The notes under the pieces: model-generated | Seen by the model: only the letters and a program-made list of their open reading frames with translations | Told to the model about the DNA's origin: nothing | Databases searched by the model: none | Position numbers and translations under genes: made by a program | NCBI RefSeq assembly: GCF_000150275.1 | Contig: NW_002061035.1 | Span: 1 to 14,229 of the forward strand | Origin: Trichoplax adhaerens | Taxonomy: Eukaryota; Animalia; Placozoa | DNA length: 14,229 nt | Direction: 5' to 3' | In this document: positions 1 to 14,040 of the stretch, piece after piece | Layout: each line of letters starts with the position of its first letter | Position numbering within the stretch: position 1 is the stretch's first letter

Positions 1-101
1 ATGGATTTGATACTAATCTTACCGTGAACCAGAATACCGGTGCCGATCGAACGGTTAACTTTAATTCTAGTTTACATGCAAAAGCAAAAATGATTCTTTT
101 G
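1..101 (+). CDS. Possible coding exon of an upstream gene, truncated by the window edge (GFDTNLTVNQNTGADRTVNFNSSLHAKAKMILL)
   Basis: The frame starting at 3 is open for 33 codons. It ends in phase 0 exactly at a consensus donor, TTG|GTAAGT (GT at 102-103), and has two N-glycosylation sequons (NLT, NSS). It is short, so chance cannot be excluded. Confidence 0.35.
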
Positions 102-1134
102 GTAAGTTCATTAATGTTAGTTTGAATTATTTTGTATTGCTAATTATTGCTGTGATTGGGCGTAAAGATATGTTGTTTATGATAACTGGATATGGAAGTA
201 GTTTTGTCATCGATAATTCATTATCAATTTTTTGAAGAGTTATCACATTATTTCTACGGGTAAAACAATGAAAGGTATCATTTAATAGTAACAAGGCAAA
301 AATTGGAAATTATGTTATACAAAAGTAAATATTAGACTGCCTGACAATTTGATAATCTGTAGCGTCATGCAAATAAATGACTGATGGAATAATATTTGCT
401 TTTATATATACATGTACGAATATTCGAGCTTTGTCAATATTTTTCACCAGTTTCAATGATTTTTTTGATTTTTTTGATTGATGTCGTACGATCATGAAAG
501 TAAGTACGTAATTGTAAATATATAGCTATTACATAACTATGCAATGTCTACAGTATTACTCGATCATTTTATGGAAGGTTCTATCAAAATGCATCACTAT
601 TTCAAGTTGATAGTACGAAGCCCTGATCCATTCGTCAATATTCACTAAAAGTTTTCGCAAGTTAGATGACGTTACAGCCATTTGCTTTCTGTTTAAAATC
701 GTTCCCAATTCGTCGTAATTTCTTGCTCCATTCTACTATAGCGTATTCTACATTGGCCATATGTCCACATACGTAAGAAAGATTGCAGATGTTTCTGCTT
801 TATTATTTAGATCCCATTCGTCAGGGTTTCATTTGTACATTGTACTAAATTGGATTCCATTTTGCCGTTACATCCACAATATCAAGAAAGATTGTGGGCG
901 TTCCTCCTTTACTATAGAGCTGATATATTTGATTAATTTTGAGCATCTGCTTACTGAATGTATTGCATTTTGAACTCGTCAACTTTCTTTGGAAGGAAGA
1001 AGTGATTAGTTGCCTTTGCGGAAAAGTTCACGTAGAGCTTTTATTAAATGAATGATCATTTTTGGGTTAGAGCCAGCTCTCGAGTCAAGAAATCACTAGC
1101 ACTCGTCTAGGTAGTGACGTTTCAAAAAGAAAAT

Positions 1135-2328
1135 ATGTTGAAGAAATTTCCTCCGTCCCTTTCCAATTGCCAAAGGGATTTCCATCTAAGTCAACTACTT
1201 CCTTATGATCCTAATGTTAAGAAAGAAAGGAGATTAATCGATGGCCTCAAAGAATATCTAGTACTTGTAATAGCTACAGAACATGTTATGGAAATGCTGA
1301 GTAAGCGTGATATCAATAAGTTTGATCCGATTGTGGGAGAAAATGCTAGCCAAATTAGAGCAGTTCAGACAGCCCTTGTCTTCCTTAAGCATCCGTCAGT
1401 GAACAACCAAGTCCTTTTATCCAAGATAAATCGAATTAAATTGCAATGCTTAAGCATGCTACAAGATATTGAGCGAGTGATTAAAGAAGGATTTTCTTTA
1501 TCCAATTTGCTAAAAGAAAAGAATATTGAACTCAATTTAAACTTTGATGAAATTTTCCTAATTGAATCTTACCTGCTTACAAAGGTGAAAATAGTCTTGC
1601 CTCCTAGACAAGAAAATCCCATCGTTAAAAACGAGTATACTGATACCAAAAAAATCAAAGAAATTAGCAGTGTAGGATCTACGTTTGCTAATAAGCTAGT
1701 AGCTCGATTAAGACAGAATCTATCCGAACACTCAGTGCAATTTGTTCAGGAGTTAGCCTATCAATTAGAGTTGGAAGAGAGTATAAAACAAATGATTTCT
1801 GCAGACTTTGTAGTAATGCATCGCAAGCTCAAGTGCACACCGTTCTTTTGGACGACAAAAGTAATCACGGAAGCGGCACTGTCTTATGGTATTCCTATCG
1901 TTATGCATGTTCAGCTAAAGAGCAAAGATAGAAATTATCAGCTGGAACATGAGATCTATCTCTACTTTGAAGCGACTTCGTCAAAATATCAGAATGTTTG
2001 TCCTTCTTCTTTACAAAAAGAATCTCCAGCGATTGTTCTGCTAGGTAGCACATGCAGAGATTCTAGTAATCTTCCGTCCATAAGCGACTGGACAAAGGAA
2101 ATAACCACATCAGGCCCAGTTGATTTACTGTTAGCTTATGCAGCAGCACATAGACAATATCCTGATGAAACATCTGAAATCAATATTCAGGACAAAGAGT
2201 TTGAATTTTATCGAAAGAAAGCTTTCGAATGGGGTTGTTGTCTACAAAATTCTTCGCGCTTTTTCTTATCGCAGGCATACTGTGATCATATTGAAAATAT
2301 GCTGCAGGAAAGCTCGAAATTAGAATAA
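1135..2328 (+). CDS. Uncharacterised ~397-aa soluble protein, paralog 1 (candidate catalytically dead copy)
   Basis: Uninterrupted 1.2-kb ORF in AT-rich DNA with full-length homology to 7096-8307. The ORF track starts at GTG 1114, but ATG 1135 (A-rich context AAAATATG) aligns with the paralog's Met. ATTAAA at 2451-2456 may be the polyA signal. No signal peptide or TM helix is evident. Confidence 0.9.
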   Translation: MLKKFPPSLSNCQRDFHLSQLLPYDPNVKKERRLIDGLKEYLVLVIATEHVMEMLSKRDINKFDPIVGENASQIRAVQTALVFLKHPSVNNQVLLSKINRIKLQCLSMLQDIERVIKEGFSLSNLLKEKNIELNLNFDEIFLIESYLLTKVKIVLPPRQENPIVKNEYTDTKKIKEISSVGSTFANKLVARLRQNLSEHSVQFVQELAYQLELEESIKQMISADFVVMHRKLKCTPFFWTTKVITEAALSYGIPIVMHVQLKSKDRNYQLEHEIYLYFEATSSKYQNVCPSSLQKESPAIVLLGSTCRDSSNLPSISDWTKEITTSGPVDLLLAYAAAHRQYPDETSEINIQDKEFEFYRKKAFEWGCCLQNSSRFFLSQAYCDHIENMLQESSKLE

Positions 2329-2912
2329 CAACTTCATTCTAAGTAACAAGAGCCTTTGTCGATTATCACAAAGTTCATCGTTAGACTATCTCATTTTTTA
2401 TTGCCAATGATACAGTAGTATGACCATTCTGTAAGTCATAACATGCCTTTATTAAATGTCTTATTTTAATGAAGAAATGTAGTGTATACTGTAGGTATAA
2501 GGTGGATTTCAGAATTATGCATTATCGTTTACTTTTTTCCACCATGCCTTGTGCATTGACTTGCGTATTGAATCTATATTGTCTACGAAATTCTTAGCTA
2601 ATGTCGGTGTAGTGTATTTAGTTTTCACTGTAATTTTTAGACATGTTCTTTAATACAGATATTTTGTTATGTTCTGAATATACATACCTCTACGTGGTAT
2701 AGACTAAGTGTTTGTGTCGTAGTATGTAGAGTATTTAGTTCTATAGCCTATTTCAACTATGCTCAAATATAGCTTGCCATGTTTAGGTATTTATAGCACC
2801 TACAGCCTTTGCTATATCCTACAATCATTTACTATTATAGCCTGTTTATGGTATATGATGTATCTAATTCTACAATCCTCTTCTCTTCATATGTTCTCTC
2901 TCTAAAATTATA

Positions 2913-2980
2913 AATACTGATGATTTCTGCCTCAGATTGGTTCAGTAATACTAATGATTTCTGCCTCAGATTGATTCAGT
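2913..2980. repeat. 34-bp tandem duplication (2 copies, 2 mismatches)
   Basis: aatactgatgatttctgcctcagattggttcagt (2913-2946) is followed by aatactaatgatttctgcctcagattgattcagt (2947-2980). Confidence 0.95.
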
Positions 2981-4019
2981 TACACTTGTTAGTGTTAGTA
3001 TTCTGCACATGTTACTTCATGACAGCTTATGCGCTGATCTACGACTAACTACCACACTCTATCTAGTTATTCTCTACAATAAATATCTCTTTTTCTAATA
3101 ACCCCTCGTATCATTATTGTGAAATGCCTAAGGAGTCTACATCCGCAGACTCTTCGAACCCTCCATCACAGTCAGTTATTTATGCTCAGAGTTTTGAATA
3201 ATAAACCACTTTTTCTTTATTCCGCTTTGTTGTTTATTTCATTAATATATTGTACAAATTAATTAGCACAGTATTTGAAAGAAATTAAATGTAAATGAAG
3301 AATTCATGGCAATCTCTATAAGTAAATTAATGGTTTGAGGCTGAAGAAAGCAATGAAATGGCACGGACACCGAATAGCTACTAGCACCGTGGACTACTAA
3401 ATATTATACCAACGAGAGCATCTAGTAGTGCATCCCAGCACCAAATTGGAGTGGAGTGCCGTACTCAGTGAGAGTACGTTGCTAGTTTAATGCATTTATA
3501 TTAAGTCTGTCATTACGAAATTGAATTTACTTCAAGAAAAACTTAAACCGGAATAGTTTTTTTTATCGATTGAATTGTCTTAGATTTAGCTTACTTCCAG
3601 ATGAGAAGGTATTGCAGTTTGTGACAAAATTTCACTCGAAACATGTTAAAATTCATTACTGAAGCTTCGTCGACGATAATTACAGCTTTTCTTAAGATTT
3701 ACCGTATCTTTAAGAAGAGGAAGATCATTTATCATGATGTTATTCATTCTTATATCTTGCTTAAAATCTACTTTACAACTTACCGGTAAGTATGTTTCTC
3801 TATAAATATCGAGAGCAAACGCGCCCATGATTATAATTAGTCTGACTTATAGGTATGAGGTTCATTCTGCAGTTTAGCAGTTTTAATTAAATTTGGATGG
3901 TATCCTAATTTATAGTATAAAGCAAAATCTTTTATTGAACACAAATATGTGATAGAATCAGAACAAAATTCGTGTATTTTGCTAATCTTGAATTTAAATA
4001 AGATTTACTAGAATCAGAT

Positions 4020-4370
4020 TATCACAGCATCGCCAATCAATTGAACTTCCTTTTAATACATTTCTTGCTTGGCATCGTCCGCATAAATTACCTTCCCTAT
4101 TGCCAATAATCTATTTTATACATTCAATCTTATTTTTATATAACGAATTCTTTGCACTTGATAGACAATATCATACAATACTGCACTAAGAGTAATCTGC
4201 TTGAATTAATTTGCAGCGTGAGCGCGGTATGCAGCAGTGAAGGGATTAATACGTTATTCGCCCATGACTCGTATCCCCCAAAACGAGTATTTCAGCTTGT
4301 AAACTAAAACTATTGGGATTTTGGTCTAGATTACCATCCACACAACAAGTTCTCTGCAACATCATCGATC
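4020..4370 (-). pseudogene. Degraded fragment of a Cys-rich extracellular protein gene (FWG...YC...NRxGxLCGxC type)
   Basis: Minus strand 4101-4072 reads NREGNLCGRC. In-frame upstream it reads CSIV*YC...ECIK* with stops. Further upstream are TTT TGG GGG (FWG) and TCCVDG in shifted frames. The motif order resembles the Cys-rich region of large multi-pass membrane proteins common in basal metazoans; this is recognised from memory, not searched. Confidence 0.45.
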
Positions 4371-5563
4371 ACAAACTTTCGTATGAATACGATTACAATA
4401 TTGTTGGTAAACCGTTATAGAACGTTATCCTTTATTCTTTCGTGCGTAACGGTAGCAATATCGAAAAGAAAGTTTAGTCTAGAATTTAAGATCCAGTAAA
4501 CACTCTTTACTATAATACAATAAAGTATCTTAATTAAAAAAATTGAGACATCGACGAATGATTATTCAATAGCCACTGATATCAATACTCGGCATTAATT
4601 AGAATGATATCGATTTATTTTATTAAACATATAATTGTACAGGCTAAATCAGGCCCAAACTAGATAAATTCTATATTTGGTTGTAGCCTAATAATTCTAT
4701 GGGTATATATAAATACTATACAGAAATTTCAACGGAATACAGCTTTGATTTTTTAACGAAGAGGAGACATCGAAAATAATCACATTGTACTGCACGGTAG
4801 GTACTGTACACTGTACAGTAGGGGTGTCAAAATCGGAAATTAAAATTTCAATATGGATTGCATTGCTTTACAGCTTACCAGAATTCTTTGCATTTGATTA
4901 TTACCCTATGTATTGTAGCATCCTAAATTATTAATGATTATTAATCTACTATATAAACGTAGTCGCATTCCTTCCTCTTCGAAATAATTAAGTAATTATT
5001 TTAAGCCATTATAAATAGTTAAGCTGATAATGTTAATTTCGCCCGCTAATTTAATTCATTATGCTGATGGACCTTAATTAATTATAACTAACATTCAATA
5101 TTATCTTTTGTGCCTATAAGAAAAATTTTGCATTTACGTAATGATTTTAACTTTTGGCGAATAAACCAAATTACTTAATGCGTATAACGAGAGATAATTT
5201 CGTCGGTTTATGATAAATATTCCTTAACATATATTTTAAATGCATATAAGTCCGTTCAAATATATACCTATAGATATTTTGTCTTTCATTATCACAGTTG
5301 CTGCATACTTTTGCGATAATTTTAATTTAATTGTGGCAATCAGCAGTCAAGATGCAATTGGCGGCCACTAATATGATATGTATATAGCAATCAATGTCGC
5401 CGCTGTTATGGGCAACAATAGGCATTCTTTTGGTCAAGCTATCTATTTTATACCTGGCTTGGAAAGACGTGCCATGACTAGCCTTACGACACAAGAAACC
5501 AATTAGTACTTATAGTCAATATTAGTTTAGTCCGTAAGACCACTTCTGTATACCGTAACTCAA

Positions 5564-5578
5564 ACACACACACACACA
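5564..5578. repeat. (AC)7 microsatellite
   Basis: acacacacacacaca. Confidence 0.9.
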
Positions 5579-6371
5579 ACAATTTTTATTGATCATTATC
5601 TCACTTATATACTCTATCTGTCGTTATAAACATATTAACTACGTTATCAGCATCTTTTAAATAACAAGTATGCTATTACAGTTAAGTTATCATACATAGG
5701 TAATTGTAGGAATAAACAATTTGATACATACGTACGTCTCAACTGCGAGCTCTTTCGAGCTCCTATATTTTATATACCTATTTGAGATTTATTACTATTC
5801 TGTTATAATATCACAATATCTAAGTTTTTTGTGTCTGTGATAAGACGATACTAATGCTAATATGTGGCAGTAAAGATTATTCTAAAGGACAAATACGAGT
5901 GAGTAAACAAAATAATCAGCATTTTACTTAATTATCATTCTTAATCCAATCAATCATAGCTATAAATGCGATAATACGACACAATTGACAGTTGGCGTAA
6001 GCGATCATTCTGAATCCAGGGGGTTAATTTGTACACCAATCTATCCATCTGGTTTTGGTAATAATATAATTCTTCACTTTTAAGTACATATGTATATGAT
6101 GTGTAATATCCTTCTATTTTTTTTAGATTGGCTCACTCAACTCCATTTAGCCATTCGCGCGCATTATACTTTGGTATTGGTTGCATTCAATTAAGTTATT
6201 ATTTCTCCAAAATAACAGCTTCTAGACTAATATTATTAGGTACAGCTATACAACAATAGATACTATACAGCACTACAAGCTTGAATTTCAACAGTAATTA
6301 CAATTCTTCCGCTTTGAACCTTTCAATTCTTTTGTATTATATCTTCTTACTTACTTTATATAGCGATGACT

Positions 6372-6394
6372 CTAACCCTAACCCTAACCCTAAC
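6372..6394. repeat. Interstitial telomeric-type repeat (CTAACC)3CTAAC, i.e. TTAGGG on the minus strand
   Basis: ctaaccctaaccctaaccctaac; TTAGGG is the ancestral metazoan telomere unit. Confidence 0.85.
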
Positions 6395-7015
6395 ATATGG
6401 TCTGATATTTTTGAATGGTTTCTAATTAGCGATGCTTTACTCTAACATTATATTGACGTAGTTTGGCAGGGTAGTATAGTAGTTGCGACTATTGGATACT
6501 GTTGTCTCGCCTACTCCTAAATGAAATGACATTATCATCTATGTTTGCTAATAAGAGGATTTCGTATATTCGGAAGGCGTATTTATTGTGCTTGCATTAA
6601 GCGTGTGCATGCAATGCAGTTTACTTTCTTGAAAGGCATTTACGAATTTTTTCAAAAGTTCCTGATTTGAACAAGCAACAGTCTTTCACCCTCGTATATT
6701 TTCTCGATTTTTTTGAAATTTGATATTTGTAGACAGTCTAATCTTTGAAATTATCGGCAATACGATATTTTATTGGTATAAGAAAGAAATTGTCATTAAC
6801 TTTATTGTGTAAAGTTCGGTTAGCGTAATTCGCTTAGGTGTATTGAAAGTCTTCACAAGGTAGATTGGCGTCGAATTGTATCCTTTCTGGTTGAGGATTA
6901 ATTTCAGCATTCGTTCAATGTGTCATCCATTAGACTCATAAAATTTCTGGAGAAATTTAAAGATATATATTGCCAGAAAATACCGTACTAAGTTCGAACT
7001 CGTGCAAATCCAACA

Positions 7016-7093
7016 GTAAGTTAATTTCCTGTTTTAGTTAAAACTCTAGTCGAACATCACTAGTAGCCAATCGATTTAATTCCATTTTTACAG
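7016..7093 (+). other. Candidate 78-nt GT-AG intron in the 5'UTR of paralog 2
   Basis: GTAAGT donor at 7016-7021. The acceptor ttccatttttacAG ends at 7093, two bases before ATG 7096. Confidence 0.55.
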
Positions 7094-7095
7094 AT

Positions 7096-8307
7096 ATGAA
7101 ATTAGAGAAAAATTTTCTGTCTCCTTTCAATAATCAAAGAGATTTTCTCTTAAGTCATTTACTTCCTTATGATCCTAATAATAATAAAGCCAAAAAATTG
7201 GAAAATGGTCTCCGCGAATATCTACTACTAATAATCGCTACAGAACAAGCTTTAGAAATCGTAGCGAAGAAAGATATCAACAGGTTTGATCCACTTGTTG
7301 GAGAAAATGCTTGCCAAATTAGATCTCTTCAGATTGCCCTTATTTTCTTGAGATATCCAGTAGATAGCCAAGCTCTTCTATCGGAGATAAGCCGAGTCAG
7401 AATACATTGCCTAAACCTTATCGAAAATCTGGATCGGATAGTTAATAAAAGACCTATATCCGATTTATTCAAAAGTGATATTGAAATTCATTTAAACTTT
7501 AGCGAGTATTTTCTAATCCAATCTTACTTGCTTACAAAAGTGAAAATATCCAAGCCACCAAGTAAAGAAAATCCTCTAGTTTTGAACGAGTATACAGACA
7601 TAAAAAAAATTGGAGAAATTAGTCACATAGGATCTAATTTTACTAATAAGCTTGTAAGCCATTTAAGACAAAGTTTGTCCGTACATTCAGTAGAGCTAAT
7701 TCAAAGTTTGGCATATCAATTAGAAATGGATCAGACTGTAAAACAAATAATCTCAGCAGATTTTGTAATAATTCATCGCCATCTCAAGTGCTTGCCATGC
7801 TTTTGGGTCAGCAAAGTAGTCATTCAAGCAGCTATTAAATACAAGATCCCTATAGTTTTACACGCTCAGCTCAAGAGCCAAGATAGAAATTATCAGATAG
7901 AAAACGAGATCTTTCTTTATTTTGATGCTACCTTAACTGGATATCAGAATGTACCCCTCATTTCCTTAAAAAAGGAAACCCCAGCCATTGTTCTAATAGG
8001 GAGTACAGCTAGAGATTTTAACAATCTTCCGTCAGTTCATGACTGGAAAAAGGAACTCATCGCATCAGGTCCTATTGATATATTTCTAGCTTGTGCAGCG
8101 ACACATAAACAGTATCCCAATGAAATGGCTGGAGAAGAAATTTATAAAGACCAAATTCAGAACAAAGAATTTCAATTTTATCGAAAAAAAGCCTTTGAAT
8201 GGGGATGCTGCCTACAAAATGCCTCCAGATTTTTCTGGTCTCATGTATACTGTGATAGTATCGAGAACATTTCTTTATCAAGCTTCGAAACTGCAGACAA
8301 CTCTTGA
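7096..8307 (+). CDS. Uncharacterised 403-aa soluble protein, paralog 2 (retains Cys73, C232xxC235, Cys333, His383; candidate active enzyme)
   Basis: Uninterrupted ATG-to-TGA ORF. Blocks shared with paralog 1 include LLPYDPN, FDPxVGENA, SYLLTKVKI, QLKSxDRNYQ and FYRKKAFEWGCCLQN. AATAAA at 8445-8450. Confidence 0.92.
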   Translation: MKLEKNFLSPFNNQRDFLLSHLLPYDPNNNKAKKLENGLREYLLLIIATEQALEIVAKKDINRFDPLVGENACQIRSLQIALIFLRYPVDSQALLSEISRVRIHCLNLIENLDRIVNKRPISDLFKSDIEIHLNFSEYFLIQSYLLTKVKISKPPSKENPLVLNEYTDIKKIGEISHIGSNFTNKLVSHLRQSLSVHSVELIQSLAYQLEMDQTVKQIISADFVIIHRHLKCLPCFWVSKVVIQAAIKYKIPIVLHAQLKSQDRNYQIENEIFLYFDATLTGYQNVPLISLKKETPAIVLIGSTARDFNNLPSVHDWKKELIASGPIDIFLACAATHKQYPNEMAGEEIYKDQIQNKEFQFYRKKAFEWGCCLQNASRFFWSHVYCDSIENISLSSFETADNS

Positions 8308-8907
8308 TTCAACATAGCAAACCAGAGGTCGATTACCTTAGAAATGAACGTTTAGGCTACCTCATTTATATCATTATTTTATTTACCGATTTTTCAGATT
8401 GGAAAGAAAATAACTAGAATGAAAATATTAGAAAAATTCTCGAAAATAAACGGAGAGCTCGTACACGTATACGCATAGAACCAGTTATAATGCAGTATAC
8501 TTAGAGTTAGAGCTAGCCGTGACATTGCTAACTATAGTAGTTAAACATTTACCTCCTTAAATAATCGCTTATTCTTTTTCGCACATATGATGCAATAAAT
8601 TTAGATCTTTAATCGTCACGTTAGTTAACTATTTCCAACTACGACATTTTTAAATAATTTATGTTTTTGCACTTCTAACTTAATCATTTTAATTCCTATA
8701 GTCGCGTAACCGTCATATGCGGCACGAAAGTAACGAAATATTTGAACACGATGGGAATATTTTCCCTTAATGGTGCTGTAATTAAGACTATACAGTATGT
8801 CACTGTGCACATGTTGTATGCATACATATAGATGTAACTCTATTGCATGAATTAATTATCGAAAGACTTAGGTTAATCGAATTATATAACTTTAATAGCG
8901 CTTCTAC

Positions 8908-9627
8908 TGGTAGACCTCATTACCCACTGCAAAGTTCGAGTAACGTGCAATAAGCGTGCAGAGCCTCCTTCGTTTAATTGGCTATTTATTAGTTATTGCT
9001 AATTAAAGTTGTTTGCTAGTTGTATCTATAGTAAACTATATAGTTTATTGAGGGTTGTTTCCCTATATGAACCAGTCAATGTTGTGTTACTAAATTACTA
9101 TGTGTACACCACAAGTTTGGTGGTATGGTATAAAAAGAGGAGCGAACGCTCAGCTTCTCAGTTCGTGATTCGATAGCTTTTCGGCTTGTTACAACTTCCA
9201 AATTTTGTAACAAGTACTAGATCTGCACTCAGCAAGGAGACCCAGTAATTAAGTTGAAGAACTAACTTTATAGTTAAAATGAAGAGTTTATATACTTTCT
9301 TTATTGTGACCTTTGATCTACTGACGTAGATCACAAGATCATCACTAACAGAAAGGTTTCCCTAGTTTAGTCATTACAAATAGACTATCATGCCAAGTAT
9401 GGCAACATGAGAATACATATATAGATAACCTTAATATAGTACCATAACTACATCTATATACGCCTGACGTGATAACATCGTGATATTTAACCATATATAG
9501 AAAGAAGGTAACATACTAATTATGTAACTATTACAGAACGTGACACGGCTACTCTATTAATAAAAACTATGCTAAACTCTTAGAACAGTCTTATCCCTGT
9601 GTGACCGTAAGTAGTATAGGACTACCA
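8908..9627 (+). mobile_element. Possible solo LTR-like relic (720 bp)
   Basis: TG...CA ends with a 9/10 terminal inverted repeat (tggtagacct / aggactacca), an internal TATA-Inr, and AATAAA at 9559-9564. No TSD, PBS or PPT was found. Confidence 0.3.
9129..9163 (+). promoter_or_regulatory. Pol II core promoter-like TATA box plus initiator
   Basis: TATAAAA at 9129-9135 and TCAGTT at 9158-9163. The TATA starts at -31 relative to the Inr A (9160), which is the canonical spacing. Confidence 0.45.
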
Positions 9628-9736
9628 CACAGTAGGCCTCCAGGTGCAGTGGAGGTAGGAATAAGTAATCAATTAGTTTAGGGTAGTAGTTCTAAGTTAA
9701 CTTTGTGGCAATTACAAATGAATGTCAATCTGACGT

Positions 9737-9874
9737 AATGATTAGCCATAAGCGATAGACTAGGAATCGTATTTTTAGATATCGTATCAAAGGAGGTTAG
9801 TGTTTTTCTCCCGCCTGCACAGTTAGTGCTTAATATCACTTACACAAAATGATTAGCCATAAGCGATAGTCTAG
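9737..9874. repeat. 27-bp direct repeat (1 mismatch), 111 bp apart
   Basis: aatgattagccataagcgatagactag (9737-9763) and aatgattagccataagcgatagtctag (9848-9874). Confidence 0.92.
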
Positions 9875-9899
9875 ATTAGATATAGCTACTGGAGGAGAT

Positions 9900-10054
9900 T
9901 CGAAAATTATTGGATCAAGCTACTTATTTTCCTCACGCAACGCTGCAATAACTAGGATTTGCTATTAAAAATATTGCATCGAAATTTATCGGATCAAGCT
10001 ACCTATTTTCCACACGTAATGCTGAAGAAATTACAATTTATTATTGAAAAATAT
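9900..10054. repeat. Diverged ~79-bp tandem duplication
   Basis: tcgaaaattattggatcaagctacttattttcctcacgcaacgctg (from 9900) versus tcgaaatttatcggatcaagctacctattttccacacgtaatgctg (from 9979). Both continue to aaaaatat. Confidence 0.9.
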
Positions 10055-10899
10055 GATATAATAGTTAGCGATTCCTTTAGAAATATCGTGAAAATGATAC
10101 AGTAAGTCAGGCTATGGATAAAGAATTGTTGATTTAGTACTTTTAATAGTACTGCACCTTCAATTTTGCTATATTGCGACAACGATATTTTGATGGGTAG
10201 AAGTCCTATCAGAGATTGGATTTAAATTGAAATTGAATCTACTAATAGCATAATCAAATGTAGGTTCCACAAGACTAAATTCAGGCTGATGTTATATTTA
10301 TTTATAAGTAATTCAAAGTGATAAGCCGTCAAAATCGATTAATATTAAGTCAGACTACTGCTGGCGTTAGTCAACCTATTTTTATACTAGTTGTAGTACA
10401 TTTATTCACTTATGCCTCTCTAAAAGTAGCTTACAAAGGAAATATATCTTATTCAAACAACTTGAAGAATAAAAACAGCGAAATCCTATTTACATATTCC
10501 GTTTACATTGGTAGCTGTGAATTAAGTCTTGACATTGTTTAAGTGTAACTTGTATAAATAAATAATATTAGTATCTCTGTAAATTTTTTTACTAGAATTT
10601 CTCGTCAGACTAATGGAAGACGAATCATGACCGTACGAATAAAGGTCAAGTCGTAGATGCAGAAGTATAAAATTCTTCAATATAAAGACGCATACAAAAT
10701 TTTATTCTAATGATATACAGCAAGGCATTACTTTTATACAGTTTTGTGAAAAATTACGACGACTAAGCTTTCTAATCTATATAATCACGATATAGTTATT
10801 GCAGTATAGGTATGTGACAAAGGCATCATCTATGCTGATCGTGATGACAAGGGCGATCTATATGATGACTGAACTAACGGGCGAGGTATGCGAACAGTT

Positions 10900-10947
10900 G
10901 TTATGGTCTAGGTATGTGACGAAGGTATCATATACCTAGACCATAAC
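10900..10947. repeat. 20-bp inverted repeat (hairpin, 8-nt loop, one G-T wobble)
   Basis: gttatggtctaggtatgtga (10900-10919) pairs with tcatatacctagaccataac (10928-10947). It is immediately followed by CTAGTTTT. Confidence 0.93.
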
Positions 10948-11421
10948 CTAGTTTTCATGTTGCGATCACTATAATCTTATTAACAACTGATTAAATGTTT
11001 ATCTGGAGCATAGAATTTCCTATGGCTATACAGTATTTTAAATTATCAAGGATTTGAAAGATTTATAGTCCTATGCAACAATAGAACTAATCATGCTTGG
11101 CGACTTTAATTTATCTTCACAATCCAGGTCATTCACGTTATACGAGATAACTTTGATAGTTATGTTAGTATCTCAAAAATACTATGACAGAGAATACAAT
11201 TGCTAGCTCAACTTCCACTTCCGTTACACAACATAGCCGTATAACGCATTTTGATATTTCTATAGGGATTTATTCATAGCAAACACGATCAGAATATATT
11301 CACTTCCTGCTATTTTTCAAACCATAATAATGAAAGAACAATTCATTCATATTAATAATTGCTTTCGCTATGTTATTTGTTCGTTTCAACTTTTATGAAA
11401 GTATAAGCTATTGTTAGCTCT

Positions 11422-11447
11422 TAAATAGTGTATAAATAGTGTATAAA
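11422..11447. repeat. 11-bp tandem repeat
   Basis: taaatagtgta x2 plus taaa. Confidence 0.8.
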
Positions 11448-12869
11448 ATAAGATGTCAAACTAATACTGAAATTAATTTTGTTAGATTCAATTATGAAAA
11501 TAAAGTTTTGTTTTTATTAATAAGTAAATATGATGAAGAGGCGGTGTTTCCTTCCCAGCTTCTTTTATTTTAGTAGTAGTGTAATTTATAACGTCTTTAT
11601 TGCTATAATCAAAATTTATTTGAGAATAACTAAATTAGCCGAGGTTAACCCTCTGAGGTTAAGATCCTGCTGGCCTTCAGTCATAAACAGTCTTCAAATC
11701 TCTCACGTAAACGTAAAGACTAATGATAATACAGACGAAAACAAATAATCGATGTCTTCGTAGCTAAAATTATAATCAAAATTTAAGATTGATAATTTAC
11801 GATGCACTCGCTTAGATAATTTCTTAACACTTAAATTAATCAAATGCCGTATCTCGATGGATAAGTATTTACCATCATCAATAAATTAAATTCATGTACA
11901 AATCTAACAGTAGGTCTACTTCTGAGAATAGAAGACTGCTTATATCTACTATTGTAAAATTTGTATATGCTCAATAAACTATACCAAACTTCTACGATAG
12001 TTCTAAAATGAAGTACAGTAATATAATGAAGATTTTAATCCTTTAACATGACCAAATTAACCTTATATTTGGTCCTTTGTTACTTATTCATTATCTGATT
12101 TGTATCGTCATTTTATCGATATCGTAAAGGAAAATTTTACATTGTATGGAAAACTTTTACTTACGAGACATTATTGTCGTATTATTTCGTTGATAGTAGA
12201 TGAGGTGCCAAATCAAAGCATTTTTAATATTTGCAATAGTCTTTTATTTGATTTCCAACGCATAAAATCACAATATTACTTTTGATTAGAAATAAAATGA
12301 ACGCGGACTGATTAAATTATTGAATCATTCTCGGCGTTAAGAATTACTTAATTATTAACTTTCTTAAGGCAGAAAAAGGATTAAAATGATAGCAAACTGC
12401 TTAACAGATTGTTTCTATATGTATATCTATAAGTATCAGATGAAGATAATGTTGGGATGGAGACATCATTACTCATAACGTATTGTTATATTATGATGTA
12501 AGTAGAATTCTACACACAAATAAATGAAGATAAATAACCATGCTACTTTAATATATTTTAGGTCGTCATTCACTTCTAGTATACTTATTATGTAAGTATA
12601 TGAAGCAGGGTTCGATCTACGCTAATAACAGAAATGTCAAAAAAGATTTTAAAATTATCGTGACTATGTCATAGTATGCATAAAACAATTATTTAACAAT
12701 CTTAGTACACTACTGGAAACATTAACCTGGATGCACACATTTTTAAAGCAATTTAAGATAAATGACTTCTTACTTCTTTATATCTATGACTAGTATCAGA
12801 AAATATTCAAAATACACACAAAACATTAATTATAATGGATTACACGAAGGAAATATTGAAAATGGACAT

Positions 12870-13826
12870 TTAGCAGTTACAACAGAACAGTCGTTTCAAT
12901 TTTGAGAACATAGCGATCCTGATTTGTTTATCAAATATCATATAGACAAGCGGATTGACAACACCCATTGAAAACATACAAGCGACAGAACCGTGAATAA
13001 TAACTGCTAGAAACGCGTTATTGCCAGAAGTATGTGAAAGTTTTATCCCCATTGCTGCTAAGATCATAGTAGAAAATAAATGAGGGATTCCTATCCCTAC
13101 ATAACAACAAGTTATTAATATTAGCATTTTGTTAAATTTCTTTCTTTTCATGAAATCATCTTGAAGCTGCTCCGATGTCCAAAATCCAGGCCTGGTATAA
13201 TTTCTTTGAAAGATTATAATTTTTGTATAAGCGATAATAATGATGGTAACAGGAATAACATAAATCAGAGTTGCTAAATGGAAAACATATATTGAAACAG
13301 AAAGGTCCTTAGCAGCATATTCACAAACAGTAACTTTGCCAGGGCTCGTAGTTAGAAACACTAGGATTGGTGATGCAATCGATATCGATGCTATCCAAAT
13401 AAAGATTTGAGTTAAAATGAGAAATTTTTTTTTATGGCATTTATAAAACATCGAGAGTGGTCTAATGACAACGAAATAGCGATCCACTGCGATTAATGCT
13501 AATGTCATAGTAGAAATGGAAGTAGATGCATAATTGGTAGTAAAGCTGATTTTACACACAATGGCGCTGAAGTTATAATCTCTCTCAATCCCATAAACGA
13601 CCAACACAGGAAGAATTGTTGTCCCACCGATAGTATCAGATATTGCTGCCATTCGTATTAGACGATAAGTTGTTTTACGGAAGTTAGGATCAGTAAATAA
13701 AATTCTGATCAGTAATAAATTAAATGCTATTCCTAGTATAAATATTGGCAAAATACTAAAAGTAGCGAAGCGGAGAGCCATGATCGAAATGGCTTTAGTT
13801 CCATTCAAAGTATTTGAAGTGTTCAT
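12870..13826 (-). CDS. Intronless class A (rhodopsin-like) GPCR, peptide-receptor-like orphan, ~318 aa
   Basis: Seven hydrophobic segments. Motifs: TM1 GxxxN, TM2 AxxD, Cys at the top of TM3 plus an ECL2 Cys, TM3 DRY, TM4 Trp, TM5 IP...Y, TM7 NPLVY and helix 8. The ORF-track start at 13916 is TTG. ATG 13826 gives MNTSNTLNGT with two N-glycosylation sequons, typical of a short GPCR N-terminus. Confidence 0.95.
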   Translation of the reverse strand: MNTSNTLNGTKAISIMALRFATFSILPIFILGIAFNLLLIRILFTDPNFRKTTYRLIRMAAISDTIGGTTILPVLVVYGIERDYNFSAIVCKISFTTNYASTSISTMTLALIAVDRYFVVIRPLSMFYKCHKKKFLILTQIFIWIASISIASPILVFLTTSPGKVTVCEYAAKDLSVSIYVFHLATLIYVIPVTIIIIAYTKIIIFQRNYTRPGFWTSEQLQDDFMKRKKFNKMLILITCCYVGIGIPHLFSTMILAAMGIKLSHTSGNNAFLAVIIHGSVACMFSMGVVNPLVYMIFDKQIRIAMFSKLKRLFCCNC

Positions 13827-14040
13827 GTTTTCTATATTTCCTTTTGTGAACTTGAAAAGTTCGATAGACGGGATGCTATATCCGACAAGGAGAAAATAAC
13901 TGAGATATAAAATCAAATACGTACGGTATATATATTTTCAATCATTTACAAAATTTAATTGCAGCAATTCTATATTTGGTATTTATCAATTCCCGACGGA
14001 AAAATAAGTCAATAAGCGTATGAATAGAACATTTACATCA

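What the first reader, a model, noticed from the sequence alone, without database searches (positions are those of the whole stretch)
1135..8307. Paralog pair with coordinated Cys/His differences: candidate enzyme plus pseudoenzyme system
Seen in sequence: four Cys/His residues of paralog 2 differ in paralog 1 by single bases, all inside conserved blocks. (1) C73 TGC (7312-7314, GENACQIR) is S AGC (1348-1350, GENASQIR). (2) C235 TGC (7798-7800, KCLPCFW) is F TTC (1843-1845). (3) C333 TGT (8092-8094) is Y TAT (2137-2139). (4) H383 CAT (8242-8244, SHVYCD) is Q CAG (2272-2274, SQAYCD). Paralog 1 is still a fully open ORF despite about 45% divergence, so it appears to be under purifying selection. 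Established knowledge: Cys-to-Ser with His-to-Gln is the classic inactivation pattern of Cys-His catalysts (papain-like proteases, deamidases, transglutaminases) and of metal-binding sites. Inference: copy 2 is an active Cys-dependent or metal-binding enzyme, and copy 1 is a retained dead decoy, substrate trap or regulator. The direction of change is unknown without an outgroup.
Basis: partly seen in the sequence, partly recalled or inferred. Interest (0 to 1): 0.85.

Follow-up and report, generated by a model that had tools for sequence, protein, structure and literature searches.

The report
Bacterial-origin enzyme genes, one catalytically dead
Two intronless genes in this Trichoplax (placozoan) scaffold belong to an unnamed bacterial Cys/His enzyme family taken up by horizontal transfer and duplicated, and copy 1 alone has very recently lost the one universally conserved cysteine and its partner histidine, so it is either a young dead-enzyme paralog or a gene starting to decay.

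Summary
Only two of the four differences matter. C73 and H383 are the conserved Cys and His of a large family with no Pfam model (C in 200 of 201 domains, H in 196 of 198). Paralog 1 is the only member lacking both. C235 is a variable position, and C333 is a novelty of the paralog-2 subclade.

The window is a Trichoplax scaffold. The placozoan copies form one clade nested inside proteins of Chlamydiota and other bacteria, so they arose by horizontal transfer followed by tandem expansion.

The telling comparison is with two sister copies, not with paralog 2. These sisters are 95-97% identical to paralog 1 and keep C73, C235 and H383, so the loss is very recent. Paralog 1 is still an open frame, its branch has omega about 0.29, and it is letter-identical in a second assembly and in contigs of three runs.

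Function is unproven. The fold is only weakly OTU/papain-like (Z about 5), and profile comparison with OTU is negative. In bacteria the gene sits in operons with NCS1 permeases, S-Me-THD-like (DUF917) genes and hydantoinase-A genes. This favours small-molecule metabolism over deubiquitination.

No evidence was obtained for a decoy or heterodimer role. Another first-stage reading (s1-744551) had flagged this same stretch as possible horizontal transfer.

The parts
1135..2328 (+). Paralog 1 (p1), 397 aa, intronless. Member of the unnamed bacterial-origin Cys/His family; lacks the conserved Cys and His.
   Evidence: ORF and translation. 61% identical to p2. 96.7% and 95.2% identical to sister copies L003 and L004. 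Exact protein also encoded in the Trichoplax sp. H2 assembly.
1324..1362 (+). p1 Cys-loop motif D-P-I-V-G-E-N-A-S-Q-I-R-A. S72 (1348-1350, AGC) replaces the invariant Cys. I66 replaces a Leu that is 91% conserved.
1843..1845 (+). p1 F237 (TTC) where the sisters and p2 have Cys. This position is variable across the family.
2272..2274 (+). p1 Q380 (CAG) replacing the near-invariant His (H383 in p2 numbering).
1005..2777 (+). Stretch covered without any difference by single contigs of public runs: X3 covers 1005-2816 and X1 covers 989-2777. X6 covers 848-2946 and differs only after 2806. A probable transcript unit of p1.
   Evidence: The run type 'RNA' is a guess for X3 and X6, so transcription is suggested, not shown.
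7096..8307 (+). Paralog 2 (p2), 403 aa, intronless, with the complete set of family-invariant residues.
   Evidence: AlphaFold2 model with pLDDT 91.7.
7288..7326 (+). p2 Cys-loop motif D65-P-L-V-G-E70-N71-A-C73-Q74-I-R76-S. C73 (7312-7314) is the first residue of helix 73-86.
8104..8118 (+). p2 H337-K-Q339-Y-P motif (family consensus H-R-Q-Y-P) at the end of helix 314-336. Q339 is conserved even in the deepest paralogs.
8242..8244 (+). p2 H383 (CAT), in strand 380-388. Candidate general base.
8092..8094 (+). p2 C333 (TGT). Derived state shared only by p2-type copies; 42 of the 53 closest homologues have Tyr.

Best explanation
p1 and p2 are two units of a tandem, segmentally duplicated array of intronless genes in the placozoan Trichoplax. 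A placozoan ancestor acquired the gene once from a bacterium; relatives are mostly Chlamydiota, with some Verrucomicrobia, Legionellales and Amoebophilus.

The family is uncharacterised and has no Pfam model. I infer that it is a thiol enzyme. C73 sits at the N-terminus of a helix, after the almost invariant loop D-x-L-V-G-E-N-A-C-Q-I-R, and would be the nucleophile. H383, on a beta-strand, would be the base. D65, N71 or Q339 would complete the site.

In bacteria the gene is operonic with NCS1 (CodB/Mhp1-type) permeases. In one subgroup it is also operonic with S-Me-THD-like (DUF917) and hydantoinase-A genes. The likeliest substrate is therefore an imported small N-heterocycle or amide, not ubiquitin. 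This is inference from gene neighbourhood.

p2 and the sister copies L003, L004 and L007 keep the full site. p1 replaced the nucleophile (C to S) and the base (H to Q) within a branch of only about 0.036 synonymous changes per site, while keeping every other invariant residue and an open frame. p1 therefore cannot carry out the ancestral chemistry. I lean slightly (about 55:45) towards it being retained as a non-catalytic paralog that still binds its ligand, rather than being a gene at the start of decay.
For: Identity and origin:
- The genome is Trichoplax and the closest named proteins are from T. adhaerens and Trichoplax sp. H2.
- The family has 1352 clusters at 50% identity and no Pfam, NCBIfam or PADLOC match.
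- 25 of the 40 named genome loci carry a Chlamydiota label; most of the rest are unclassified or Verrucomicrobia MAGs.
- The placozoan copies form one clade (SH-aLRT 98) nested within the rest. Its successive sisters, P0003 (99) and P0005 (100), lie on gene-dense bacterial contigs.
- The array lies on the 13-Mb scaffold C1414 among pseudogene copies. The window also carries an animal GPCR, and the H2 orthologue lies near an Arf/Ras GTPase gene.

Active site:
- C73 starts helix 73-86 and H383 lies in strand 380-388.
- The only solved fold that spans both residues is OTU: 6w9r Z 5.0, 124 residues, 3.6 A; OTUB1 4ddg Z 4.4; OTUB2 and viral OTUs Z 3-4.
- The alignment end-points are consistent with C73 matching OTUB1 C91 and H383 matching H265. 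The OTUB1 residue numbers are from my own knowledge.

Bacterial context:
- 32 of 56 family genes have a permease gene within 400 nt, and 30 of 42 loci hold one.
- The permease profile hits Mhp1 (E 6e-8) and CodB (E 2.7e-5). Four of its 52 members match Pfam PF02133 at E up to 0.1 (best 2.7e-13).
- Eight loci show a tight operon of family gene, usually a permease, S-Me-THD-like gene and hydantoinase A.

p1:
- Sisters L003 and L004, the H2 orthologue P0002 and every pseudogene copy keep Cys and His.
- The p1 branch has about 10 nonsynonymous and 9 synonymous changes, omega 0.29, P = 0.009 against neutrality.
- Three of its 9 scorable replacements hit positions that are at least 90% conserved, against 0 of 11 in the sisters.
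- The sequence is real. It is identical over 6057 nt in the H2 assembly. Contigs of three runs from three studies cover its CDS without a difference.
Against: - No biochemical data exist for any family member.
- The OTU/papain-like resemblance is weak. Z of 5 or less is in the range the tool calls 'common arrangement'. It falls to Z 2.8 for the C-terminal domain folded alone.
- Profile-profile comparison with an OTUD3-based profile is negative (probability 0.25%).
- The OTU hallmark, an acidic residue two positions after the His, is absent; the motif here is H-A/V-F/Y.
- I could not measure the spatial adjacency of C73 and H383.
- The omega of 0.29 is averaged over the whole p1 branch, so the constraint may predate the inactivating changes.
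- The branch is short and the array makes pseudogenes freely: L002, L009, L010, L012 and the frameshifted p2-like copy L006/L008.
- H1 and H2 are identical in the flanks too, so their identity says nothing about selection.
- Transcription of p1 rests on runs whose RNA label is a guess.
- The enrichment of replacements at conserved sites is modest (hypergeometric P = 0.03; Fisher P = 0.07).
Confidence: 0.55

Rival explanations
1. p1 is simply a nascent pseudogene. Relaxed selection in a redundant tandem array let the catalytic residues mutate first by chance, and the open frame only reflects the short time elapsed.
For: The p1-specific branch is very short: about 9 synonymous changes and dS about 0.036. 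The array contains at least five decayed copies. Two intact near-identical sisters make p1 dispensable. The enrichment at conserved sites is only P = 0.03 to 0.07.
Against: Omega on the branch is 0.29, significantly below 1 (P = 0.009). All other invariant residues are intact (D65, E70, N71, Q74, R76, K150, H-R-Q-Y-P). Hitting both C73 and H383 at random has probability about 6e-4. Full-length contigs without a difference occur in several runs, with transcript-like ends.
Confidence: 0.38
2. The family is an OTU-type deubiquitinase or Ubl protease, an effector of intracellular bacteria. Trichoplax uses the captured copies in ubiquitin signalling, and p1 is a ubiquitin-binding dead DUB.
For: OTU structures are the only recurring full-span structural matches. 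The Cys-loop G-E-N-A-C-Q-I-R-A resembles the OTU motif D-G-N-C-L-F-R-A seen in Trichoplax OTUD3. The taxa are those rich in host-directed effectors: Chlamydiota, Legionellales and Amoebophilus.
Against: None of 53 members hits Pfam OTU. hhalign probability is 0.25%. There is no H-aromatic-D/N/E motif. Z is at most 5. The tight operons with a 12-TM NCS1 permease, a DUF917 gene and hydantoinase A are not what one expects of a secreted effector.
Confidence: 0.15
3. C73, H337 and H383 are ligands of a catalytic or structural metal (a Cys-His-His site), not a nucleophile-base pair. p1 is then a metal-free copy.
For: The family has three near-invariant Cys/His residues. Substituting Ser and Gln would also abolish a metal site.
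Against: H337 is Tyr in the deepest paralog group, which still keeps C73 and H383. The other cysteines vary. The Cys at a helix N-terminus and the His on a strand is the papain-like arrangement. No match to metallohydrolase folds was seen.
Confidence: 0.12
4. The Ser/Phe/Gln codons, or the genes themselves, are artefacts: sequencing errors, or bacterial contamination of the assembly.
For: The window is a short unplaced scaffold (14.2 kb) of a draft assembly. The genes are intronless and bacterial-like.
Against: The sequence is identical over 6057 nt in an independent assembly. Contigs of runs from three studies cover the p1 CDS with no difference. Paralogs lie on a 13-Mb scaffold. An animal GPCR is in the window. 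GC is 34-37%, close to the host's 32%. The bacterial partner genes are absent from the locus.
Confidence: 0.02

Closest known systems
OTU deubiquitinases (Pfam PF02338), for example Wolbachia wMelOTU (PDB 6w9r), OTUB1 (4ddg) and nairovirus vOTU (3pse)
   Same: The sequence order is Cys then His. The Cys is at a helix N-terminus after a conserved acidic/Asn loop, and the His is on a C-terminal beta-strand. They are the best, and the only full-span, structural matches (Z 3-5, 114-144 residues aligned). The Cys-loop motifs look alike.
   Different: There is no sequence-profile relationship. There is no acidic residue two positions after the His. About 270 extra residues are present, including a large helical insertion, and the element order around the sheet differs. 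The genomic context is metabolic, not effector-like. Ubiquitin binding could not be assessed (one search gave no answer).
Papain-like (clan CA) small-molecule amidases and transferases, such as NlpC/P60, CHAP amidases, phytochelatin synthase and Cif-type Cys-His-Gln enzymes. This comparison is from established knowledge and was not tested here.
   Same: A Cys nucleophile at a helix N-terminus plus a His on a strand. A conserved Gln or Asn (Q339, N71) could serve as oxyanion-hole or triad residue. Some members act on non-protein amides, which fits the permease and hydantoinase neighbourhood.
   Different: No structural or sequence hit to any of these families appeared. The resemblance is one of principle only.
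Pseudoenzymes derived from thiol enzymes, for example catalytically dead DUB or protease paralogs (known kind)
   Same: The nucleophile and the base are replaced while the fold and the rest of the pocket are kept. An active paralog sits next door.
   Different: The p1 copy is extremely young: 3-5% protein divergence from active-type sisters. It is in a horizontally acquired family of unknown activity, and no retained function has been shown.
Bacterial NCS1 permease, hydantoinase A (HyuA-like) and S-Me-THD-like (DUF917) gene clusters
   Same: The bacterial relatives of p1 and p2 sit inside such clusters, often with overlapping stop and start codons.
   Different: The Trichoplax array carries only the Cys/His gene. 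No NCS1 gene was found in the genome. A HyuA plus S-Me-THD-like gene with introns lies on another scaffold.

Membership tests
OTU deubiquitinase (PF02338) | Significant sequence or profile match to the OTU domain | tested here: not met
   No PF02338 hit in any of 53 members at E up to 10. hhalign of A1 against an OTUD3-based profile gives probability 0.25%. The profile search of PDB sequences finds no OTU.
OTU deubiquitinase (PF02338) | OTU fold: central beta-sheet between helical lobes, with the catalytic Cys helix | tested here: inconclusive
   OTU chains are the only full-span matches but are weak: 6w9r Z 5.0 over 124 residues at 3.6 A; 4ddg Z 4.4; others Z 3-4. Foldseek E is 0.29 or worse. 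The C-terminal domain alone gives Z 2.8.
OTU deubiquitinase (PF02338) | Triad threaded as C...H-aromatic-D/N/E, or an A20-type acid before the Cys (PMC7396840) | tested here: not met
   The order Cys then His is met, but the motif is H-A/V-F/Y-x, with no acid at +2. Invariant D65 and E70 upstream of the Cys could play an A20-like role; this was not tested.
OTU deubiquitinase (PF02338) | Binds and cleaves ubiquitin or Ubl | not testable with these tools
   Complex prediction of p2 with Trichoplax ubiquitin returned 'no answer'. This is not evidence either way.
Papain-like thiol enzyme (general) | Invariant Cys at the N-terminus of a helix and invariant His on a beta-strand | tested here: met
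   DSSP on the model gives helix 73-86 and strand 380-388. C73 is C in 200 of 201 and H383 is H in 196 of 198.
Papain-like thiol enzyme (general) | Cys and His side chains adjacent in 3D | not testable with these tools
   Model coordinates are not exposed. Only the end-points of alignments to OTU structures are consistent with equivalence.
Pseudoenzyme (retained dead paralog) | Catalytic residues lost relative to active homologues | tested here: met
   p1 alone has Ser and Gln. All other Trichoplax copies and the bacterial members keep Cys and His.
Pseudoenzyme (retained dead paralog) | Purifying selection after the loss, and expression | tested here: inconclusive
   Omega is 0.29 on the p1 branch (P = 0.009), but the branch cannot be split into before and after the loss. 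Full-length contigs occur in runs guessed to be RNA.
Horizontally transferred bacterial gene in an animal | Animal sequences nested within a bacterial clade, with physical integration among host genes | tested here: met
   Tree. Bacterial identity of the sister contigs. Host scaffold, GPCR and GTPase neighbours.
NCS1 permease (PF02133), for the bacterial neighbour family 'B' | Profile match to NCS1 transporters, about 12 TM segments | tested here: met
   Hits to Mhp1 (E 6e-8) and CodB (E 2.7e-5, near full length). Four of 52 members match PF02133 at E up to 0.1, best 2.7e-13.

The most novel reading that the evidence does not exclude
p1 is not decaying. It is a selected, very young pseudoenzyme. 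In an animal that captured a bacterial thiol enzyme of a previously undescribed fold family, one tandem copy had both catalytic residues replaced in quick succession while the rest of the pocket stayed intact. This converted a metabolite-processing enzyme into a metabolite-binding, non-hydrolysing protein, such as a sensor, buffer or regulator of its active sisters. The active copies would work with the host's own hydantoinase-A/S-Me-THD-like enzyme on a diet- or symbiont-derived N-heterocycle.
Probability: 0.25. Interest if true: 0.7.

Novelty: new variant of a known kind. Interest (0 to 1): 0.5.

Why it matters
If it holds, this gives three things at once.

1. It defines a large protein family (more than 1300 clusters at 50% identity) with no Pfam model. 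The family has a sharply defined Cys/His site and a conserved operon context, so it is a tractable target for enzyme discovery.

2. It is a clean case of bacterium-to-animal gene transfer into one of the earliest-branching animal lineages, followed by birth-and-death evolution in a tandem array.

3. It is a natural experiment in which an enzyme and its catalytically dead copy differ by only about 13 residues. This is ideal for asking how pseudoenzymes arise and what the first steps are.

If p1 is merely decaying, the finding reduces to an ordinary horizontally transferred gene family with one dying copy.

Tried and rejected
- Pfam, NCBIfam and PADLOC scans of p1, p2, the 53 homologues and the bacterial neighbours gave no family for the Cys/His protein.
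- ESM Atlas searches by features and by shape gave nothing above noise.
- The profile search of PDB sequences returned only noise.
- hhalign against an OTUD3-based OTU profile was negative.
- Complex prediction of p2 with Trichoplax ubiquitin returned no answer, with score 0.00 and the alignment not used. It counts neither for nor against binding.
- The C-terminal domain (p2 residues 146-403) folded alone with pLDDT 92.9. The wide structural search with it was swamped by matches to one long helix, and OTU matches dropped to Z 2-3.
- The bacterial neighbour family B is not a divergent, Cys-less paralog of the family: hhalign probability 0.1%. B is an NCS1 permease.
- The 700-975 aa family members are not enzyme-permease fusions. 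They carry an unknown soluble C-terminal domain, or are tandem fusions of two family domains.
- No copy in the genome could have donated the Ser and Gln codons by gene conversion; none carries them.
- Contamination and sequencing error were rejected.
- Literature searches found no description of this family or of these Trichoplax genes.

Full report
**1. What is in the window**

The window has only three ORFs of 80 aa or more and is 32% G+C. They are p1 (1135-2328, +, 397 aa from the first ATG), p2 (7096-8307, +, 403 aa) and a rhodopsin-type GPCR (12870-13916, -; Pfam 7tm_1, E 1e-29). The window is the whole of scaffold C1322 of a 105.6-Mb, 1414-contig genome. The closest named proteins are from Trichoplax adhaerens and Trichoplax sp. 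H2.

**2. The observation**

p1 and p2 are 61% identical. Both have eight cysteines, and p1 has three that p2 lacks. Cys differences therefore run both ways.

**3. The family and its conserved residues**

Neither protein hits Pfam, NCBIfam or PADLOC. A word-indexed search found 58 relatives. A profile search of 1.84 billion cluster representatives found 1352 at E up to 1e-3 and 342 at E up to 1e-30.

In 217 aligned domain instances the conservation is as follows:

| p2 position | Count |
|---|---|
| D65 | 200 of 200 |
| C73 | 200 of 201 (the exception is p1) |
| R76 | 200 of 201 |
| H337 | 196 of 199 |
| Q339 | 196 of 199 |
| H383 | 196 of 198 (exceptions: p1 Gln, P0088 Tyr) |

The loop D-x-L-V-G-E-N-A-C-Q-I-R-A is almost letter-perfect across bacterial members. 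Even the deepest paralog group keeps D65, N71, C73, Q339 and H383, while H337 becomes Tyr there.

C235 is variable (Met 68, Cys 62, Phe 22, Tyr 21). Position 333 is also variable: Tyr in 42 of the 53 closest homologues, and Gly 63, Tyr 63, Cys 20 across the wider set. Cys there occurs only in p2-type copies. The other two carry no signal.

**4. Origin**

Named genome loci are mostly Chlamydiota (Parachlamydiales, Rhabdochlamydiaceae, Simkaniaceae, Waddliaceae, Anoxychlamydiales). There are also Verrucomicrobia MAGs, a Legionellales MAG, Candidatus Amoebophilus and a few others. A remote relative lies on a Legionella antarctica plasmid.

In a maximum-likelihood tree the seven placozoan sequences form one clade (SH-aLRT 98). 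It is nested within the rest and its successive sisters are P0003 (99) and P0005 (100). Both sisters lie on gene-dense bacterial contigs.

The Trichoplax copies lie on the 13-Mb scaffold C1414 at 13.07-13.13 Mb and on this scaffold. They are intronless, have host-like G+C (34-37%) and are interspersed with decayed copies. In H2 the p2 orthologue lies on a 203-kb contig near an Arf/Ras GTPase gene. This is a single horizontal transfer followed by tandem or segmental duplication, not contamination. Driscoll et al. 2013 (PMC3641634) list other bacterial genes in this genome, some of them chlamydial, but I found no mention of this family there.

**5. The key comparison**

Scaffold C1414 carries two copies, L003 and L004 (TRIADDRAFT_52829 and 52830). 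They are 96.7% and 95.2% identical to p1 and keep C73, C235 and H383. L007, the H2 orthologue P0002 and all pseudogene copies keep the Cys and His as well. The Ser and Gln are therefore derived and unique to p1.

With L003 and L004 polarising each other, the p1 branch carries about 10 nonsynonymous changes: Y58R, L66I, C72S, L88S, I235T, C237F, A241T, F310S, residue 370 and H380Q. It carries 9 synonymous changes. That gives omega 0.29 and P = 0.009 against neutrality. By the same counting, the L003 and L004 branches give about 0.12 and 0.19.

Three of the nine scorable p1 replacements hit positions that are at least 90% conserved, against 0 of 11 in the sisters. The hypergeometric P is 0.03 and the Fisher P is 0.07. 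All other invariant residues are intact in p1.

**6. Is p1 real and used?**

The H2 assembly (GCA_003344405.1) has a 7-kb contig identical to window 1-6057 over 6057 nt. Single contigs of runs from three studies cover the p1 CDS without any difference: 1005-2816, 989-2777 and 848-2946. One begins with an Illumina adapter. These ends look like a transcript of about 1.8 kb, but the RNA label of those runs is a guess, so transcription is suggested, not shown. H1 and H2 are identical in the non-coding flanks too, so their identity says nothing about selection.

**7. Fold**

AlphaFold2 with the 53-sequence alignment gives pLDDT 91.7. C73 is the first residue of helix 73-86. H383 lies in strand 380-388. 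H337 ends helix 314-336.

Foldseek finds nothing at E up to 0.001, and its top hit is a rice OTUB-like domain at E 0.29. VIA-align finds no Z of 6 or more. The only chains that span both C73 and H383 are OTU deubiquitinases:

| Chain | Z | Aligned residues |
|---|---|---|
| wMelOTU 6w9r | 5.0 | 124 (3.6 A) |
| OTUB1 4ddg | 4.4 | 129 |
| OTUB2, C. elegans and rice OTUB, nairovirus OTUs | 3-4 | 114-144 |

The alignment end-points fit C73 matching OTUB1 C91 and H383 matching H265. The OTUB1 residue numbers are from my own knowledge.

Against OTU membership:
- No member hits Pfam OTU.
- hhalign gives probability 0.25%.
- The motif after the His is H-A/V-F/Y, not H-aromatic-D/N/E as defined in PMC7396840.
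- The C-terminal domain folded alone (pLDDT 92.9) matches OTUs only at Z 2-3.

I therefore call it 'papain/OTU-like in layout, membership not shown'.

**8. Bacterial context changes the functional guess**

Next to the bacterial genes lies a second family of about 415 aa that is hydrophobic throughout. Its profile hits the hydantoin permease Mhp1 (E 6e-8) and the cytosine permease CodB (E 2.7e-5). Four of its 52 members match Pfam Transp_cyt_pur (PF02133) at E up to 0.1, the best at 2.7e-13. It is an NCS1 permease.

Of 56 family genes, 32 have such a permease within 400 nt, and 30 of 42 loci contain one. Typical cassettes alternate permease and enzyme, as in permease-enzyme-permease-enzyme-permease. 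In eight loci there is a tight operon of family gene, usually an NCS1 permease, an S-Me-THD-like (DUF917) gene and hydantoinase A. In six of the eight it includes the permease. The stop and start codons often overlap.

This context points to metabolism of an imported small N-heterocycle or amide, not to a secreted deubiquitinase.

Trichoplax has no detectable NCS1 gene. It does have, on scaffold C1409, adjacent intron-split hits to hydantoinase A and S-Me-THD-like domains. A possible partner enzyme therefore exists in the host.

**9. Verdict**

p2, and more to the point L003, L004 and L007, has the complete Cys/His site of an uncharacterised enzyme family of bacterial origin. p1 has lost the nucleophile and the base and cannot perform the ancestral chemistry.

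Whether p1 is a retained pseudoenzyme or a gene that has just begun to decay is open. Constraint on the branch, the intact pocket and probable transcripts favour retention. The very short time elapsed, the redundancy and the pseudogene-rich array favour decay. Nothing supports a decoy or heterodimer role in particular, and a multi-Cys metal site is not supported.

Noticed in passing
window 12870-13916 (-): Intronless rhodopsin-family GPCR (Pfam 7tm_1, E 1e-29) with DRY-like and NPxxY-like motifs. It is an animal gene next to the bacterial-origin genes.
   Followed up: partly
L030:5905-12515, L031:1392-7859, L022:3661-10486: Conserved bacterial five-gene cassette that alternates NCS1-type permeases (three paralogs) with two divergent paralogs of the Cys/His family. 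Neither family has a Pfam hit for most members.
   Followed up: yes
L060:846-5776, L064:536-5481, L071:36-5266, L063:6386-11381, L065:7848-12979, L044:7992-13108: Tight four-gene operon of Cys/His family gene, NCS1 permease, S-Me-THD-like (DUF917) gene and hydantoinase A, with overlapping stop and start codons. L062 and L068 have the same operon without the permease.
   Followed up: partly
G000:C1409:358666-361194 (+): Trichoplax has adjacent, intron-split matches to Hydantoinase_A and S-Me-THD-like domains. This may be a fused HyuA-DUF917 gene, and so a host counterpart of the bacterial operon partners. Its origin (ancestral or transferred) was not examined.
   Followed up: no
G000:C1414:13069000-13132000 and window 1-12541: The window is one unit of a segmentally duplicated array. 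Window 1-4625 is 95% and 93% identical to two C1414 segments. Window 4827-9186 is 95% identical to a third, which holds a p2-like copy split into two overlapping reading-frame pieces. C1414 has an 18.3-kb gap at 13100000-13118312 into which this 14.2-kb scaffold might fit. Decayed copies are L002, L009 (on C1179), L010 and L012.
   Followed up: partly
window 7016-7093: A GTAAGT at 7016 and a pyrimidine-rich tract ending in CAG at 7091-7093, two bases before the p2 ATG, look like a short intron in the 5' UTR. This would be a eukaryotic feature gained after transfer. It was not tested with reads.
   Followed up: no
window 2836-2877: Short element with very high contig depth (up to about 1850) in several runs. 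Contigs there continue into unlike sequence, so it is probably a dispersed repeat just downstream of p1.
   Followed up: no
P0057, P0122, P0123, P0132, P0151, P0153, P0159, P0179, P0180, P0183, P0187, P0197, P0198; P0059, P0062: A subgroup of the family carries a shared soluble C-terminal extension with no Pfam hit in the members scanned; the proteins are 578 to 975 aa long. Two proteins are tandem fusions of two family domains.
   Followed up: partly
L077:949-7005 vs window 1-6057: The T. adhaerens scaffold and a Trichoplax sp. H2 contig are 100% identical over 6057 nt, non-coding DNA included. In contrast, p2 differs from its H2 counterpart P0001 by about 1% of residues.
   Followed up: partly
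NZ_AP022841.1:3280-4521 (-): Remote homologue (20% identity, 93% coverage) annotated as a hypothetical protein on a 35-kb Legionella antarctica plasmid.
   Followed up: no
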